From positions 1-59,297 of the forward strand of contig JAADVB010000102.1 of the NCBI GenBank assembly GCA_023334545.1: 59,297 nt of DNA, read 5' to 3'. The translations under genes were made by a program, and so were the position numbers. This DNA comes from Salisapilia sapeloensis CBS 127946 (taxonomy: Eukaryota > Protista > Oomycota). This document shows, one piece after another, positions 29,736 through 33,307 of this stretch; positions within the stretch are counted from its first letter, which is position 1; each line of letters starts with the position of its first letter. The notes beneath the pieces were generated by a model. The model was not told where the DNA came from. It was given only the letters and a program-made list of their open reading frames with translations, and searched no databases.

Positions 29736-30487
29736 TTACACCGTTCCTTCATCTTCATCGTCGTCGTGCTCCTCCACCTCGTCATCTTCGTACTGATGGT
29801 CGTAGACGAACGTCTCTACTGGAGGCGCCTCCGGAACGGCGAACACGATGCCGTCCATGGACTTGTCCAGCACAATCTCCGTGCCTAGTCGAGAGCTATA
29901 TCCGTCTGTCAGTCAAGTATACCTCACAGGAGACTAAAAGCAGCATACTATTCCGTCCGGTCTTCCTCCGGGACGTAGTCGAGCACCTGAAGCTCCTGCT
30001 CGTTCGGAGGTGGCAGGACCGATGCCCACGCGTTGGACACGACCACGTGCGACTGGGCCGACGTGGCTCCTACTCACTCCATTAATTCCCATACTCTACC
30101 TCTATCCCCTTAAGCAGACCAACCTTCGCCAAAGAGGCTCTCAGTGTAGTAGTCGTCGCGAGGAGCGTCGTAGGCTCCGCCACCGCCGTACGAGTCGTCC
30201 TGGATAAAGTCGTTGCCGGACATCTGGCATGCCTGACGGAGCGTCTGTCCAACCCGGCCTTCGATCGTGTGTCGGTTACCCTCAAAGTCCACCAGCACTA
30301 CGTTCACACTAGGTCCACAATAAGTCTACAGCGACGAGGTATTTAAACAGGTTTAGTACATTTTCTCGGCCACTGTCGGGCCGTCGTTCGCTTCAGCAGC
30401 GAGGCCGCCGACCCACCTCCGTCCGAGGTTGCTCGAGACGGTCTTGGGCGCCACCGTGCGCGCGTGTCGGACTACTCGACTCAGCAT
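29736..30487 (-). CDS. Mitochondrial adrenodoxin-fold protein lacking Fe-S cysteine ligands (4 exons)
   Basis: Presequence MLSRVVRHAR. VNVVLVDFEGNRHTIEGRVGQTL (adrenodoxin-like start), SAQSHVVV (in place of CSTCHV) and YSRLGTEIVLDKSMDGIVFAVP (in place of SRLGCQI). Three GT-AG introns. Confidence 0.8.
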
Positions 30488-30614
30488 CTCTAAGCTCTTC
30501 CTTTCCGATGGTCTTGTAGCCGCACACGCGTGGCTAAATGTACACCTATTGATTGACTATATTGGGTGGAAGCTATATCGCACCCGTTTTATTTCCTTTC
30601 TTTCGACAGACAAA

Positions 30615-32636
30615 ATGTACACGAAAATGAGCGCCAGCGGGTCGGCGCTGATCTCGAACCCGAGGACGATCTCCAAGTCACTTGAGAGCAAGATATCTGC
30701 TGCTATTGCAGGTGTGATTGCTCGACATGATATGAGCCAACTTTCGACGAAAATCGTACGACAGGCAGTCGAGAGAGAGGTGAAAGTTAGTCTGAGCAAC
30801 CACAAGGAGGTGCTCAAGCGACTGATGCACCAAGAGTTCCGCAAGTACAAGGCTCAAAAGGTTTCTTATCTTAGGAGTGTACAGAAAGTATGAATTCTGA
30901 CCATGGTAACTTGGACATGTAGCTAGCCGCCAAGAGTGTTCCCGAGCCATGGAGATACAAGCTTCGCCAGGAAACCATTCGTAAAGGTTAGCAAGATATG
31001 TACGACTTTCCAATACAACCACCCTAAAGCGAACCGCAAATAGCTATGAAATGGACGTATGGGGTTGTGAAGCAGACGGGAGTCTTCGCCGACGTCGGTG
31101 TCCACGCGATCCAGAACTTTTACCAGCTAGAGAACGCAGCCACCGGTGTGAACAGACAGATAGCCACCATGTATGCACGTCAGCTAGGTGCTATGTGGAT
31201 GCAGCAGCCTTCTCTACCGGAATGGCAGCCAAAGACGCTGCCGACGACAAGTCAAGTGGCAGACGCTTTGCTCTCAGTATACACCGTCGAGCAGTTGGGC
31301 ATATGCCACGATCGCAGAGCAGAATTACTTCAGTTCTTTGGTCGTAGTACTCCAGCATATAGTGTCATGGTAAAAGTTACCTTCGCCACTAGCTTCCTGA
31401 AATTATGGACTAACGTTAACACTACACAGGACTACTTTGGGTGGGATCCTACCGCTGAATCGACTTCAGACGATTCAACACCAGTAACTTCGAGTAAGCT
31501 CATGGCCAACGCCCTCCTCCTTGGCTACCTAGCGCATAAACTGAACGTCAGCCTCGGTTGCTCCTTCACACAAGTAGCCTTTACTTTCCGATTAGTTCCT
31601 CCGTTGGATACGCTCATGACTAATGCATTCTTTCCTGCGGATGATATAGATACTGCAGCATCTACCGTCCTTTTATCCATACAAGGGTCGAGATGAGTTA
31701 TCATCAGAAGAGTTTTACGACCAAACCCACTTGATCACGACTGTCGTGCTCGTCCTGTCAGACTTTGGTCGGTTATACTGTGAGCCAGTATGTATCCATC
31801 AATTGCAGACATCCACCACCTTAATGTATTAATAATGCGTTTGTGCAGGAGCTACTTCCTCATGAGTACATGTTCCTACGTCAGAACCTCATCCTTCATA
31901 TCATCCAACAAGACACGACACTCATCGGCGAGAGTCTTCGTGTAAGCACCTTCGTCAAAAAATAACAGCAAGCTATTCCTGACGCCATGTATTAGGCGCT
32001 CAAATGCTTTTCCAACGCGATGAACTTGACGATCGTCCGGCGTGGCATGGCTTTCCTGCTCAAGACACAACGTGAGGACGGAAGCTGGCATTCCGGTGTA
32101 GAAGAAACGGATGCACAGCAGTATTACACGACTATGAACGGTATCTGGGGCGTGGAAGGCCCTTGTGGCAGAGGCTTTGCTCCGTTTGCACCAGAGCTAC
32201 TGCCGATCCTGGAGCTCCAGGCCAACGCCGTCTTCGAAGCAAACGTACGCTTAGCGAATAGCACCAAGTAGTATAGACATAACGAAACATTTTGATCATG
32301 TAGATTTCTGCTTCTGAAAAGGTGGAAACGACGACTACTACTCCTGTGAAGAGTGAAGAGACGACTTACCCTGCACCACCTGCAGAAGAGAGTTTGGAAA
32401 ACCAGATCAAGTTTCTACAAGGTCTGTTGGAAAAGAAGGATGGAAATGTGAAGAATGCGAGCGCTGGGATGGCAACCCATGTGCTGTCGACATTGTCTTC
32501 AATGAAATTTTCTGTGGAAGTGCTCAAGTCGACAGGCATAGGCAAAGTCATCTACAAGCTCAGAAAGCACTCGGACGCGCAGGTGGCAAAGACAGCCAGT
32601 CAGCTTGTCACGACGTGGAAGAAAGACTTTCTCTAG
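30615..32636 (+). CDS. Multidomain protein: DEK-C + helical QW-motif (terpene cyclase/prenyltransferase-like) region + TFIIS N-terminal (LW) domain (8 exons, 530 aa)
   Basis: Exons 30615-30860, 30923-30986, 31044-31369, 31430-31573, 31650-31787, 31849-31941, 31996-32244 and 32304-32636 total 1593 nt with no internal stop. DEK-C pattern IAGVIARHDMSQLSTKIVRQAVEREVKVSLSNHKEVLKRLM. FLLKTQREDGSW. TFIIS-N LKSTGIGKVIYKLRKH...ASQLVTTWK. Confidence 0.8.
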
Positions 32637-33307
32637 GTAGTTATAAGAAAATAAGTTTGCATTGGAGGTAAGGAAATCATAGCTTTATCGATCTTTTTAG
32701 CTACGGCTCAAGTAGTGTGAATATCAGCGCAATACAAAGCCCAATCAGGAATCTTATGACGTTTTAATTAATCAAAAGTAGTGAGACATTCATTAGATGG
32801 CTGAAGCAGAACTAGGACAAAGCTAGCGAGGACGAGCCGTTCCTGGAACAAAGATGATTTTAGTATGCTTTACTGCTTCAAGGAGATGATGCCACGTTCC
32901 TTCATCGGTCCAGAGCAACAATGCTGTAAGGTCATATCACTCTTAAAAATAAAATTATTGACCGGGCATAAGAAATCGTATCAGCCTTGAATATCTAGTC
33001 GGCATCTTGCCTGTCTAAAGTTGCTTACTCTTTCCGAAGATACTGCAATCTATCATCGTTTCCATCGTACTTGTCTTGCAGACTTGGTAACATTATGCTA
33101 GTCATACTTTTCACCATGAACTAGGAAGAGATGCCATCATGTTTGGGTGCACCAACGTCGACACAACTATCACGAAATGCCCATGCAAGTAGAATGGTCC
33201 GTTGCCAGAGTTTCCAAGTATCTTCAAGTTAAAGTAGTTCCATCGCTTCGATTGTCACTTTAATGTGTCGACACATCACATACACAAGAGTGCATCAATC
33301 GACCAAA

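What the first reader, a model, noticed from the sequence alone, without database searches (positions are those of the whole stretch)
30615..32636. DEK-C + enzyme-like alpha/alpha-barrel + TFIIS-N fusion: possible chromatin- or Pol II-associated enzyme
Five apparently unrelated ORF-track fragments splice into one 530-aa protein via seven phase-consistent introns. The ends are nuclear interaction modules: DEK-C (chromatin) and TFIIS N-terminal/LW (binds transcription-elongation TIM motifs). The about 330-aa middle is helical, with FYDQTHLITTVVLVLSDFG, DTTLIGESLRALKCF, a QW-type FLLKTQREDGSW and YYTT..GIW. That resembles terpene-cyclase/prenyltransferase-fold barrels and related uncharacterised bacterial proteins. 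I see no DxDD cyclase motif. I know of no described system with this architecture. It could be a lineage-specific nuclear modifying enzyme or scaffold.
Basis: partly seen in the sequence, partly recalled or inferred. Interest (0 to 1): 0.75.

Follow-up and report, generated by a model that had tools for sequence, protein, structure and literature searches.

The report
Nuclear protein with bacterial-type helical barrel
A real, expressed water-mould gene joins a DNA-binding module and a docking module for transcription factors to a helical barrel; one bacterial relative of that barrel is reported to modify small peptides, but this copy lacks the barrel's best-conserved residues, so it is more likely a nuclear adaptor than an enzyme.

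Summary
Transcript-like contigs from two public runs carry the stretch 30575-32806 with all seven GT..AG introns removed exactly at the predicted junctions, including 32245-32303. The locus is therefore one 8-exon, 530-codon gene. Exon 1 is DEK_C (7.5e-10) and exon 8 is a TFIIS N-terminal domain (3e-16).

The middle is an (alpha/alpha)6 toroid, and more precisely a divergent DUF6895 domain:
- Pfam PF21836 is hit above its cutoff by ochrophyte relatives.
- hhalign against bacterial DUF6895 gives 95% probability.
- The AlphaFold model of the Pythium orthologue (pLDDT 90) matches bacterial DUF6895 models at TM 0.86-0.87.
- It matches terpene cyclases only generically (Z 13-14).

The family spans the stramenopiles rather than one lineage. 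Oomycetes carry DEK_C, many ochrophytes carry an HMG box instead, and Blastocystis has the barrel alone.

By title, a 2026 paper reports a DUF6895 protein as a lasso-peptide epimerase. Three positions are His/Asp/His in bacteria and His/His/His in ochrophytes and Blastocystis. In this gene they are Thr/Thr/Tyr.

Most likely the protein is a non-catalytic chromatin and elongation-factor adaptor, but an active enzyme is not excluded.

The parts
30575..32806 (+). Extent of the spliced transcript seen in public contigs. The 5' UTR starts at or before 30575 and the 3' UTR reaches at least 32806.
   Evidence: table 8: X1 contig covers 30575-32748 and X3 contig covers 30606-32806, both 100% identical
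30615..30860 (+). Exon 1 (82 codons). It holds the start ATG and the DEK_C domain (about 30684-30839).
   Evidence: Pfam DEK_C 7.5e-10. There is no ATG between 30575 and 30614. Orthologues start with the same MYTKM.
30861..30922 (+). Intron 1, 62 nt, GT..AG
   Evidence: joint, seen in X1, X3, X5 and X6
30923..30986 (+). Exon 2 (64 nt, ends in phase 1). It is the link from DEK_C into the first barrel helix and carries the conserved PW..R motif.
30987..31043 (+). Intron 2, 57 nt, GT..AG
31044..31369 (+). Exon 3, the N-terminal helices of the toroid
   Evidence: phmmer with this piece found 27 relatives.
31370..31429 (+). Intron 3, 60 nt. It is in frame and free of stops, yet it is removed.
   Evidence: Orthologues have no matching 20 residues.
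31430..31573 (+). Exon 4, with the family-wide DYFGWDP motif
31574..31649 (+). Intron 4, 76 nt, GT..AG
   Evidence: The acceptor at 31649 is used, not the alternative AG at 31658.
31650..31787 (+). Exon 5, with motif A (PYK..YDQ..LITT..DFG). Thr at 31740-31742 sits where bacteria and ochrophytes have the conserved His. A His lies one helical turn earlier, at 31728-31730.
31788..31848 (+). Intron 5, 61 nt, GTATGT..CAG
31849..31941 (+). Exon 6, with ELLPHEY and motif B (DTTLIGE). Thr at 31918-31920 sits where bacteria have Asp and ochrophytes have His. The conserved Glu at 31930-31932 is kept.
31942..31995 (+). Intron 6, 54 nt, GT..AG
   Evidence: seen in X1, X3 and X5
31996..32244 (+). Exon 7, with the QW-like repeat (32038-32088) and motif C (YYTTM). 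Tyr at 32125-32127 sits where bacteria and ochrophytes have the conserved His. The toroid ends in this exon.
32245..32303 (+). Intron 7, 59 nt, GTACGC..TAG. It contains the in-frame TAG at 32269-32271.
   Evidence: removed in both full-length contigs, with 249 nt on the shorter side of the joint
32304..32636 (+). Exon 8. It holds a Thr/Glu/Pro-rich linker, then the TFIIS N-terminal domain (about 32391-32633) and the stop TAG at 32634-32636.
   Evidence: Pfam Med26 3e-16. In the full-length orthologue model the linker has pLDDT below 50 and the TND scores 80-94.

Best explanation
Shown. The locus is one expressed 8-exon gene of an oomycete. It encodes a 530-residue protein of three folded modules:
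1. An N-terminal DEK_C domain, a DNA/chromatin-binding module.
2. A roughly 330-residue (alpha/alpha)6 toroid that is a divergent member of the bacterial DUF6895 family.
3. After a disordered acidic/Thr-rich linker, a C-terminal TFIIS N-terminal domain (TND). This five-helix bundle has no known enzymatic activity and reads short disordered motifs in other proteins.
The gene belongs to a family found across stramenopiles. The barrel and (usually) the TND are constant, while the N-terminal DNA-binding module is exchanged: DEK_C in oomycetes, HMG box in many ochrophytes.

Inferred. The protein is nuclear. It bridges DNA or chromatin (through DEK_C) to motif-bearing elongation or chromatin factors (through the TND), and so brings the barrel to transcribed chromatin. 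The barrel's ancestral job was probably to bind, and possibly to modify, a peptide segment. This is suggested by the bacterial members, which sit next to small peptide genes, and by one member reported as a lasso-peptide epimerase.

In this gene, the three positions conserved as His/Asp/His in bacteria and His/His/His in ochrophytes and Blastocystis are Thr/Thr/Tyr. I therefore think this barrel now works as a non-catalytic binding or adaptor module (a pseudoenzyme) that stays under purifying selection.

Confidence by layer: about 0.95 for gene model and architecture, about 0.85 for DUF6895 kinship, about 0.5 for 'adaptor, not enzyme'.
For: Gene model and expression:
- Full-length spliced contigs match the model exactly.
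- 26 synonymous against 8 non-synonymous codon changes versus a close relative.
- Exons align collinearly to full-length orthologues, with nothing missing or extra at the junctions.

End domains: Pfam DEK_C 7.5e-10 and Med26/TFIIS-N 3e-16.

DUF6895 kinship of the middle:
- PF21836 is hit above its cutoff by family members: P0024 3.5e-10 at 40 bits, plus P0014, P0021 and precomputed hits on P0049-51 and P0063.
- hhalign of the family against six bacterial DUF6895 proteins gives probability 95%, E 3e-8.
- The AF2 model of the Pythium orthologue's barrel (pLDDT 90.2, pTM 0.89) matches bacterial DUF6895 cluster models at TM 0.86-0.87, rmsd 2.3 over 316 residues.
- Protein-language-model features score 0.94, and 20 of the 30 nearest clusters are DUF6895.

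Fold class: VIA-align Z 12-14 to oxidosqualene and squalene-hopene cyclases, MstE, GH105 and LanC-like proteins.

Family range and module swap.

Module layout: in the full-length orthologue model, residues 439-469 have pLDDT below 50 between the barrel and the TND.

Conserved-position analysis:
- Bacterial conserved positions across Actinomycetota, Bacillota and Pseudomonadota.
- Their equivalents in stramenopiles.
- The loss is nested: Aphanomyces R/H/H; Pythium T/(S or A)/H; oom_lgn (P0044) T/P/H; Phytophthora-like T/(A or V)/F, with P0046 S/V/F; this window T/T/Y.

Bacterial context: a small peptide gene, then one or two DUF6895 genes, then a beta-lactamase-type serine hydrolase.

Literature: the TND reads disordered sequences and has no known enzymatic activity (PMC9987994, abstract). 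A DUF6895 lasso-peptide epimerase is known to me by title only (Shi et al., ACS Catal 2026, cited in PMC13352647).
Against: - The catalytic residues of DUF6895 are not known to me, because the paper is not held. 'Loss of the active site' therefore rests on conservation alone.
- I could not get model coordinates, so I have not shown that the three positions cluster in a pocket.
- Five of the eight oomycete sequences, this one included, carry a His four residues before the lost one. That is one helical turn, so the side chain may simply have moved. An exon-only hhalign even prefers to pair that His with the bacterial one, though weakly (probability 13%).
- The conserved Glu of motif B and many family-specific motifs (YxDQ, ELLPHEY, DYFGWDP, PYK) are intact. 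They could form a different active site.
- Nuclear localisation, DNA binding and TND partners are inferred from domain families and were not tested.
- The window's own joined protein was not folded. The fold evidence comes from an orthologue that is 49% identical overall and 41% in the barrel.
Confidence: 0.55

Rival explanations
1. Active nuclear enzyme. The barrel still catalyses a DUF6895-type reaction (peptide epimerisation or a related change) on a nuclear substrate such as a histone tail, a disordered elongation-factor segment or the Pol II CTD. DEK_C and the TND deliver it to that substrate.
For: - Kinship to DUF6895, with one member reported as a lasso-peptide epimerase.
- Strong purifying selection on the barrel exons.
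- Many conserved polar motifs are kept: YxDQ, PHEY, and the Glu of motif B.
- A His lies one helical turn before the lost His in most oomycetes.
- Tethering an enzyme through a TND has a precedent in PNUTS-PP1 (titles and abstracts).
Against: - Three positions that are conserved in bacteria from three phyla and are His in 18 ochrophyte and Blastocystis sequences are Thr/Thr/Tyr here.
- They decay stepwise across oomycetes, the pattern expected after loss of the ancestral activity.
- Aphanomyces has also lost the QW repeat.
Confidence: 0.25
2. Ligand sensor. The barrel binds a small molecule (a lipid, isoprenoid or cofactor, as transcobalamin-type and prenyl-binding toroids do) and couples its presence to transcription.
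For: - (alpha/alpha)6 toroids include non-enzymatic ligand carriers. Transcobalamin, haptocorrin and intrinsic factor appear at Z 10-11 and in the Foldseek list.
- Loss of the conserved His positions is compatible with a binding-only role.
Against: - No specific similarity to any carrier family; all such matches are generic fold hits.
- The nearest relatives (DUF6895) sit next to peptide genes, not small-molecule pathways.
Confidence: 0.12
3. Terpene-cyclase or prenyltransferase-type enzyme acting on an isoprenoid substrate in the nucleus.
For: - One QW-like repeat matches squalene-hopene cyclase repeats (6.5e-6, but only 20 residues).
- Weak SQHop_cyclase_C hits.
- Fold Z 13-14 to OSC, SHC and MstE.
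Against: - No DxDD.
- One repeat rather than several; a single domain rather than a beta-gamma pair.
- All Pfam and NCBIfam cyclase scores are far below their cutoffs.
- TM is only 0.43-0.45 to cyclase structures, against 0.86-0.87 to DUF6895 models.
- GH105 and LanC-like proteins score equally well, so the match is at fold level only.
Confidence: 0.03
4. Gene-model artefact: two or three neighbouring genes wrongly joined, with the TFIIS-N part made separately.
For: An in-frame TAG lies inside intron 7. Several public orthologue models are truncated or split (P0001 392 aa; Aphanomyces entries of 289-475 aa).
Against: - Two independent full-length contigs join all eight exons.
- The same three-module order appears in Pythium, Phytophthora and Aphanomyces, and in 62 oomycete members of one Atlas cluster.
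Confidence: 0.01

Closest known systems
Bacterial DUF6895 proteins (Pfam PF21836). One member is reported, by paper title, as a lasso-peptide epimerase (Shi et al., ACS Catal 2026, 16:1757).
   Same: - Same single-domain (alpha/alpha)6 toroid: TM 0.86-0.87.
- Profile-profile homology over the C-terminal third.
- Shared motif skeleton: Y..T[H]..F.L..WG, then ..L..E.., then Q..DG, then Y[H].T.
   Different: - This protein is eukaryotic, intron-containing and flanked by DEK_C and a TND.
- The His/Asp/His positions are Thr/Thr/Tyr.
- It has family-specific motifs absent from bacteria (ELLPHEY, DYFGWDP, PYK).
- The window's exons, and the Pythium barrel, do not reach the Pfam threshold on their own.
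Stramenopile orthologues annotated 'TFIIS N-terminal domain-containing protein', 'HMG box domain-containing protein' or 'hypothetical' (e.g. Pythium oligandrum TMW57451.1, Phytophthora cinnamomi, Aphanomyces euteiches, Tribonema minus, Chrysophaeum taylorii, Blastocystis sp.)
   Same: Same family. Oomycete members have the same DEK_C + barrel + TND order and are 46-51% identical to this protein (36% for Aphanomyces).
   Different: - Ochrophyte members replace DEK_C with an HMG box or have no N-terminal module.
- Blastocystis has the barrel alone.
- Ochrophytes and Blastocystis keep all three His.
TND-containing transcription scaffolds (TFIIS, Elongin A, IWS1, MED26, PNUTS/PPP1R10, LEDGF)
   Same: C-terminal five-helix TND, Pfam Med26 3e-16. 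Like PNUTS-PP1, it couples a TND to an enzyme-type module.
   Different: The TND is C-terminal and fused in cis to a toroid. In the review abstract I read (PMC9987994), no TND protein with such a domain is mentioned.
Single-domain class II terpene cyclases (MstE 6sbb; 8pak/8paj; 6ij1) and the squalene-hopene cyclase gamma/beta domains
   Same: (alpha/alpha)6 toroid and one QW-like repeat.
   Different: No DxDD, TM only about 0.43, and no family-level sequence match.
Chlorophyte DUF6895 + Nse4_C proteins (ESM Atlas cluster, 56 members)
   Same: Another eukaryotic DUF6895 barrel (TM 0.79) fused to a chromosome-associated module.
   Different: The partner is the C-terminal domain of Nse4, the SMC5/6 kleisin (my own knowledge). 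There is no DEK_C or TND, and the lineage is different. I did not fetch these sequences.

Membership tests
DUF6895 (PF21836) | Match to the Pfam HMM above the gathering score (23.8 bits) | tested here: inconclusive
   The window's exons scanned singly gave no hit at E<=1. The Pythium orthologue's barrel gave none at 0.01. Ochrophyte and Blastocystis members of the same family pass: P0024 40.2 bits, P0014 and P0021 about 26 bits, and precomputed hits on P0049-51 and P0063. The joined window protein was not scanned, by rule.
DUF6895 (PF21836) | Same fold as bacterial members | tested here: met
   The AF2 model of orthologue P0004:90-425 (pLDDT 90.2) matches two bacterial DUF6895 clusters at TM 0.87 and 0.86, rmsd 2.3 A, over 316-317 residues. 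This was tested on the orthologue, not on the window protein.
DUF6895 (PF21836) | Profile-level sequence homology to bona fide bacterial members | tested here: met
   hhalign of family alignment A2 against six bacterial proteins (each 1e-84 to PF21836) gives probability 95.1%, E 3.3e-8 over 104 columns.
DUF6895 (PF21836) | Conserved His (TH..F.LTDWG), Asp (WDL..ELL) and His (YH.TL) | tested here: not met
   These positions do not vary in the Streptomyces, Kitasatospora, Pseudalkalibacillus and Cupriavidus proteins. The window has Thr (31740-42), Thr (31918-20) and Tyr (32125-27). The Glu of the second motif is kept.
DUF6895 lasso-peptide epimerase (function) | Published catalytic residues and substrate | not testable with these tools
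   The paper is not held. Only its title is known, from the reference lists of PMC13352647 and PMC13453073.
Class II terpene cyclase / squalene-hopene cyclase | DxDD proton-donor motif | tested here: not met
   No DxDD in any middle exon.
Class II terpene cyclase / squalene-hopene cyclase | Family HMM above cutoff and several QW repeats | tested here: not met
   SQHop_cyclase_C scores 14.4 bits against a cutoff of 26.1. TIGR01787 scores 15.5 against 322.7. There is one repeat only.
TFIIS N-terminal domain (PF08711, Med26) | HMM match above cutoff | tested here: met
   59.4 bits against a cutoff of 20.6, E 3e-16. The orthologue model shows a helical bundle with pLDDT 80-94.
TFIIS N-terminal domain (PF08711, Med26) | Binding of TND-interacting motifs | not testable with these tools
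   Needs binding assays or AP-MS.
DEK_C (PF08766) | HMM match above cutoff | tested here: met
   39 bits against a cutoff of 24.8, E 7.5e-10, profile positions 3-54 of 54.

The most novel reading that the evidence does not exclude
The stramenopile family is a chromatin-tethered peptide-modifying system. In ochrophytes and Blastocystis, where the His triad is intact, the DUF6895 barrel would epimerise or otherwise modify residues in nuclear disordered segments (histone tails, elongation-factor motifs, the Pol II CTD). That would be a post-translational mark not known on chromatin. The oomycete protein, this one included, would either keep that activity with a His shifted by one helical turn, or have become a reader of the same segment.
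Probability: 0.12. Interest if true: 0.9.

Novelty: new variant of a known kind. Interest (0 to 1): 0.6.

Why it matters
All three domains are known families. However, the searchable literature does not describe a bacterial RiPP-type DUF6895 barrel built into a nuclear protein between a DNA-binding module and a TND. The family is conserved from Blastocystis to brown-algal relatives and oomycetes.

Two observations argue that the barrel has a real job on chromatin:
- The N-terminal DNA-binding module has been swapped (DEK_C or HMG box).
- Green algae appear to have fused the same barrel independently to Nse4_C.

If the members with an intact triad are active, this would be a route to a new kind of protein modification on the transcription machinery. 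The oomycete members offer a natural series of stepwise active-site decay, which makes the enzyme-versus-adaptor question directly testable.

For annotation, the work also shows that several public oomycete gene models of this family are truncated or split.

Tried and rejected
- Word-index search with the 216-residue ORF and the Atlas feature search with exons 3-4 found nothing. Exon-sized queries are too short, and the length filter hides the 530-residue relatives.
- phmmer of exons 3-4 against PDB found nothing.
- The PDB hit of exon 7 to the 'CV39L lectin' (6gxs) comes from a repeated W-Q-D-x-G-x-W-H string in a repeat protein. I discarded it as a motif-level coincidence.
- Foldseek against PDB gave no match at E<=0.001. 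The VIA-align matches tie at Z 12-14 across unrelated toroid families, so they give the fold only.
- The genome-contig scan with the stramenopile alignment (pattern ELLPHEYxF) found no bacterial relative. The second scan, with the bacterial alignment, returned only near-identical Streptomyces loci and added no diversity.
- Bacterial DUF6895 sequences were reached instead through a weak tblastn hit (E 0.9) on a Streptomyces plasmid. Pfam then confirmed that hit at 1e-85.
- hhalign of single window exons against the bacterial profile is too weak to stand alone.
- The sigma-70 promoter and terminator scan is irrelevant for a eukaryote.
- The ACS Catalysis paper could not be read.
- I could not obtain model coordinates, so clustering of the three positions in space is untested.
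Full report
**1. The observation.** Three-frame translation of 30600-32700 shows coding segments in changing frames, separated by short GT..AG stretches. Worked out by hand, the model has eight exons:
- 30615-30860
- 30923-30986
- 31044-31369
- 31430-31573
- 31650-31787
- 31849-31941
- 31996-32244
- 32304-32636

They total 1593 nt, which is 530 codons plus the stop (checked).

Public runs were searched with the stretch. Four small runs of one organism held 0.67-0.68 of its sampled words, close to the exonic share. Laid on the window, one contig of X1 (1745 nt) and one of X3 (1772 nt) are 100% identical to it. They cover 30575-32748 and 30606-32806 and skip exactly the seven predicted introns (62, 57, 60, 76, 61, 54 and 59 nt, all GT..AG). 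Three points are worth noting:
- Intron 3 is in frame and stop-free, yet it is removed.
- Intron 4 uses the acceptor at 31649.

The runs are labelled RNA only as a guess. A contig lacking seven GT-AG introns is spliced RNA by content. A relative at about 93-95% identity (X5, X6) also shows introns 1, 2, 3 and 6 removed. Its differences from the window fall into 26 synonymous and 8 non-synonymous codon changes, so the frame is under purifying selection, the barrel exons included.

There is no ATG between 30575 and 30614. Orthologues start with the same residues and end with the same WKK motif.

**2. The two ends.** Pfam gives DEK_C for exon 1 (E 7.5e-10, 39 bits against a cutoff of 24.8, full profile length). 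It gives Med26/TFIIS helical bundle for exon 8 (E 3e-16, 59 bits against 20.6). According to the review PMC9987994 (abstract), the TND is a five-helix bundle with no known enzymatic activity that reads disordered sequences of other proteins. That DEK_C binds DNA is from my own knowledge of the DEK literature and was not tested here.

**3. Relatives.** All searches used exon references or proteins that the tools returned.
- The word-index search with the longest stop-free piece was blank, as its length filter would predict.
- The exhaustive phmmer search with exons 3-4 found 27 proteins, the best at 42% identity.
- Pfam scans and cluster look-ups of these and two further word searches define one family.

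The family's architectures are:
- **Oomycetes** (Pythium oligandrum, P. insidiosum, Phytophthora cinnamomi and P. boehmeriae, Aphanomyces euteiches and A. cochlioides): DEK_C + middle + TND.
- **Ochrophytes** (Tribonema, Chrysophaeum, Discosporangium, Chrysoparadoxa and many metagenomic proteins): HMG box or no N-terminal module + middle + TND.
- **Blastocystis**: the middle alone.

All are named 'hypothetical', 'TFIIS N-terminal domain-containing' or 'HMG box domain-containing'. An Atlas cluster of 62 oomycete proteins has Med26 in 95% and DEK_C in 85% of its members.

The window's exons align collinearly to the full-length orthologues with no gap or overlap at any junction. Identity is 46-51% to Pythium and Phytophthora, 36% to Aphanomyces and 25-32% to ochrophytes. 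The family is therefore old and spans the stramenopiles. It is not lineage-specific.

**4. What the middle is.** Singly, the window's middle exons hit no Pfam or NCBIfam family above cutoff. Only the QW-like repeat in exon 7 gives weak cyclase hits and a 20-residue match to each QW repeat of squalene-hopene cyclase. Four lines of evidence identify the domain as DUF6895 (PF21836):
- **(a) Pfam.** Ochrophyte and Blastocystis members hit PF21836 above its gathering score.
- **(b) Profile homology.** A weak tblastn hit on a Streptomyces plasmid led to genuine bacterial DUF6895 genes, confirmed by Pfam at 1e-84 to 1e-85. More followed in Kitasatospora, Pseudalkalibacillus and Cupriavidus. hhalign of the stramenopile alignment against six of them gives 95% probability, E 3e-8.
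- **(c) Fold.** The barrel of the Pythium orthologue, folded with the family alignment, gives a confident model (pLDDT 90.2, pTM 0.89). It matches bacterial DUF6895 cluster models at TM 0.86-0.87, rmsd 2.3 A over 316 residues, and the oomycete cluster at TM 0.93.
- **(d) Language-model features.** 20 of the 30 nearest clusters are DUF6895, with a score of 0.94.

Against solved structures there is only fold-level similarity. Foldseek E is at best 0.016 with TM 0.43-0.45. VIA-align Z is 12-14, tied among oxidosqualene and squalene-hopene cyclases, MstE-type single-domain cyclases, GH105/GH88, LanC-like cyclases and sugar epimerases.

The cyclase/prenyltransferase link is remote, and there is no DxDD. 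A full-length orthologue model shows DEK_C (pLDDT about 85), the barrel (above 90), a disordered linker (residues 439-469, below 50) and the TND (80-94).

**5. What DUF6895 does.** Only two held papers mention the family. [quoted passage not shown] The paper itself is not held, so I know the title only.

The bacterial loci I fetched fit a peptide-directed role. In Streptomyces fungicidicus and Kitasatospora fiedleri the gene order is:
1. A 62- or 68-codon gene with a similar C-terminal Gly/Leu-rich, then Pro/Lys-rich tail.
2. A protein of about 240 residues with no family match.
3. One or two DUF6895 genes.
4. A beta-lactamase-family serine hydrolase.

At least 550 Streptomyces loci encode close relatives.

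**6. The conserved positions.** In the bacterial proteins, which come from three phyla, the most conserved stretches are TH..F.LTDWG, WDL..ELL and YH.TL. A His, an Asp (with a Glu four residues later) and a His are the same in all of them. The confident part of the hhalign alignment pairs these with DQCYLVTH..F.L..WG, DVHLVGE and YHATM of the stramenopile family.

All 18 ochrophyte and Blastocystis sequences examined have His at all three positions. Oomycetes do not:

| Lineage | Position 1 | Position 2 | Position 3 |
|---|---|---|---|
| Aphanomyces | R | H | H |
| Pythium | T | S or A | H |
| oom_lgn (P0044) | T | P | H |
| Phytophthora-like | T or S | A or V | F |
| This window | T | T | Y |

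The loss is nested and appears to follow oomycete branching (the branching order is from my own knowledge), as expected when a site decays after its function is lost. The Glu is kept.

Four caveats apply:
- I do not know the published catalytic residues.
- I have no coordinates, so clustering in a pocket is an inference.
- Five of the eight oomycete sequences, this one included, have a His four residues earlier, which is one helical turn. An exon-only alignment weakly prefers pairing that His with the bacterial one (probability 13%).
- Many family-specific polar motifs remain intact.

**7. How it most likely works.**
- **Shown:** one expressed gene, three modules, DUF6895 kinship, family-wide conservation, exchange of the N-terminal DNA-binding module, and degenerate conserved positions.
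- **Inferred:** the protein is nuclear; DEK_C holds it on DNA or chromatin; the TND docks on motif-bearing elongation or chromatin factors; and the barrel, once probably a peptide-binding or peptide-modifying domain, now serves as a non-catalytic binding module in this lineage.

I put about 0.5 on 'adaptor, not enzyme', 0.25 on a still-active enzyme, about 0.1 on a small-molecule sensor, and very little on a terpene-type enzyme or a mis-joined model.

**8. Novelty.** All three domains are known, and the protein family is already in the databases, unnamed. I found no description of the architecture in the searchable literature: searches returned nothing, and the TND review's abstract mentions none. 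Green algae appear to have fused the same barrel to Nse4_C. That is a second, independent link between DUF6895 and chromosome proteins, but I did not fetch those sequences. I rate this a new variant of a known kind.

**9. Rule-bound omissions.** The joined 530-residue protein was not built for any search, family scan, fold or look-up. Fold evidence therefore comes from an orthologue, and family evidence from exons and relatives.

Noticed in passing
window 30400-30487 (- strand gene ending upstream) and 30487-30575: The upstream neighbour on the minus strand is covered by contigs of much higher word depth (898-1279 in X3) than this gene (92-151). About 90 nt separate its transcript end from this gene's first transcribed base, which suggests a very short divergent promoter region.
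   Followed up: no
L002:6148-10003 and L003:4950-7945: In Streptomyces and Kitasatospora, the gene order is a 62-68-codon peptide gene with a conserved Gly/Leu then Pro/Lys tail, a protein of about 240 residues with no family, one or two DUF6895 genes, and a beta-lactamase-type serine hydrolase. It looks like an undescribed RiPP-like operon. At least 550 Streptomyces loci encode close relatives of the DUF6895 gene.
   Followed up: partly
ESM Atlas cluster, row 4 (no locus fetched): A chlorophyte cluster of 56 proteins of about 856 residues carries DUF6895 (96%) together with Nse4_C (95%). This is another eukaryotic fusion of the barrel to a chromosome-associated module.
   Followed up: no
P0001 (Phytophthora boehmeriae, 392 aa), P0047 (P. 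cinnamomi, 516 aa), P0028-P0038 (Aphanomyces, 289-475 aa): Several public gene models of this family lack barrel segments that are present in their relatives. P0001 jumps from the exon-3 region to the QW repeat, and P0047 lacks the QW repeat. These are probably skipped exons or split models rather than real deletions.
   Followed up: partly
P0026 residues about 405-432; P0024 residues about 330-385; P0012: Some ochrophyte members carry inserts in one barrel loop, just before or after the DYxGWDP motif. P0026 has a zinc ribbon (PF13240/PF13248), P0024 a long Gly-rich run, and P0012 a further domain (PF18359).
   Followed up: no
P0007 (Aphanomyces euteiches), barrel region aligned to window 32038-32088: Aphanomyces has lost the QW-like repeat (Q..DGSW is replaced by P..FVQT) while keeping two of the three conserved His. 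This is the reverse of the pattern in the window.
   Followed up: no
If real, DEK_C paired with TNDs is a recurring oomycete theme.
   Followed up: no
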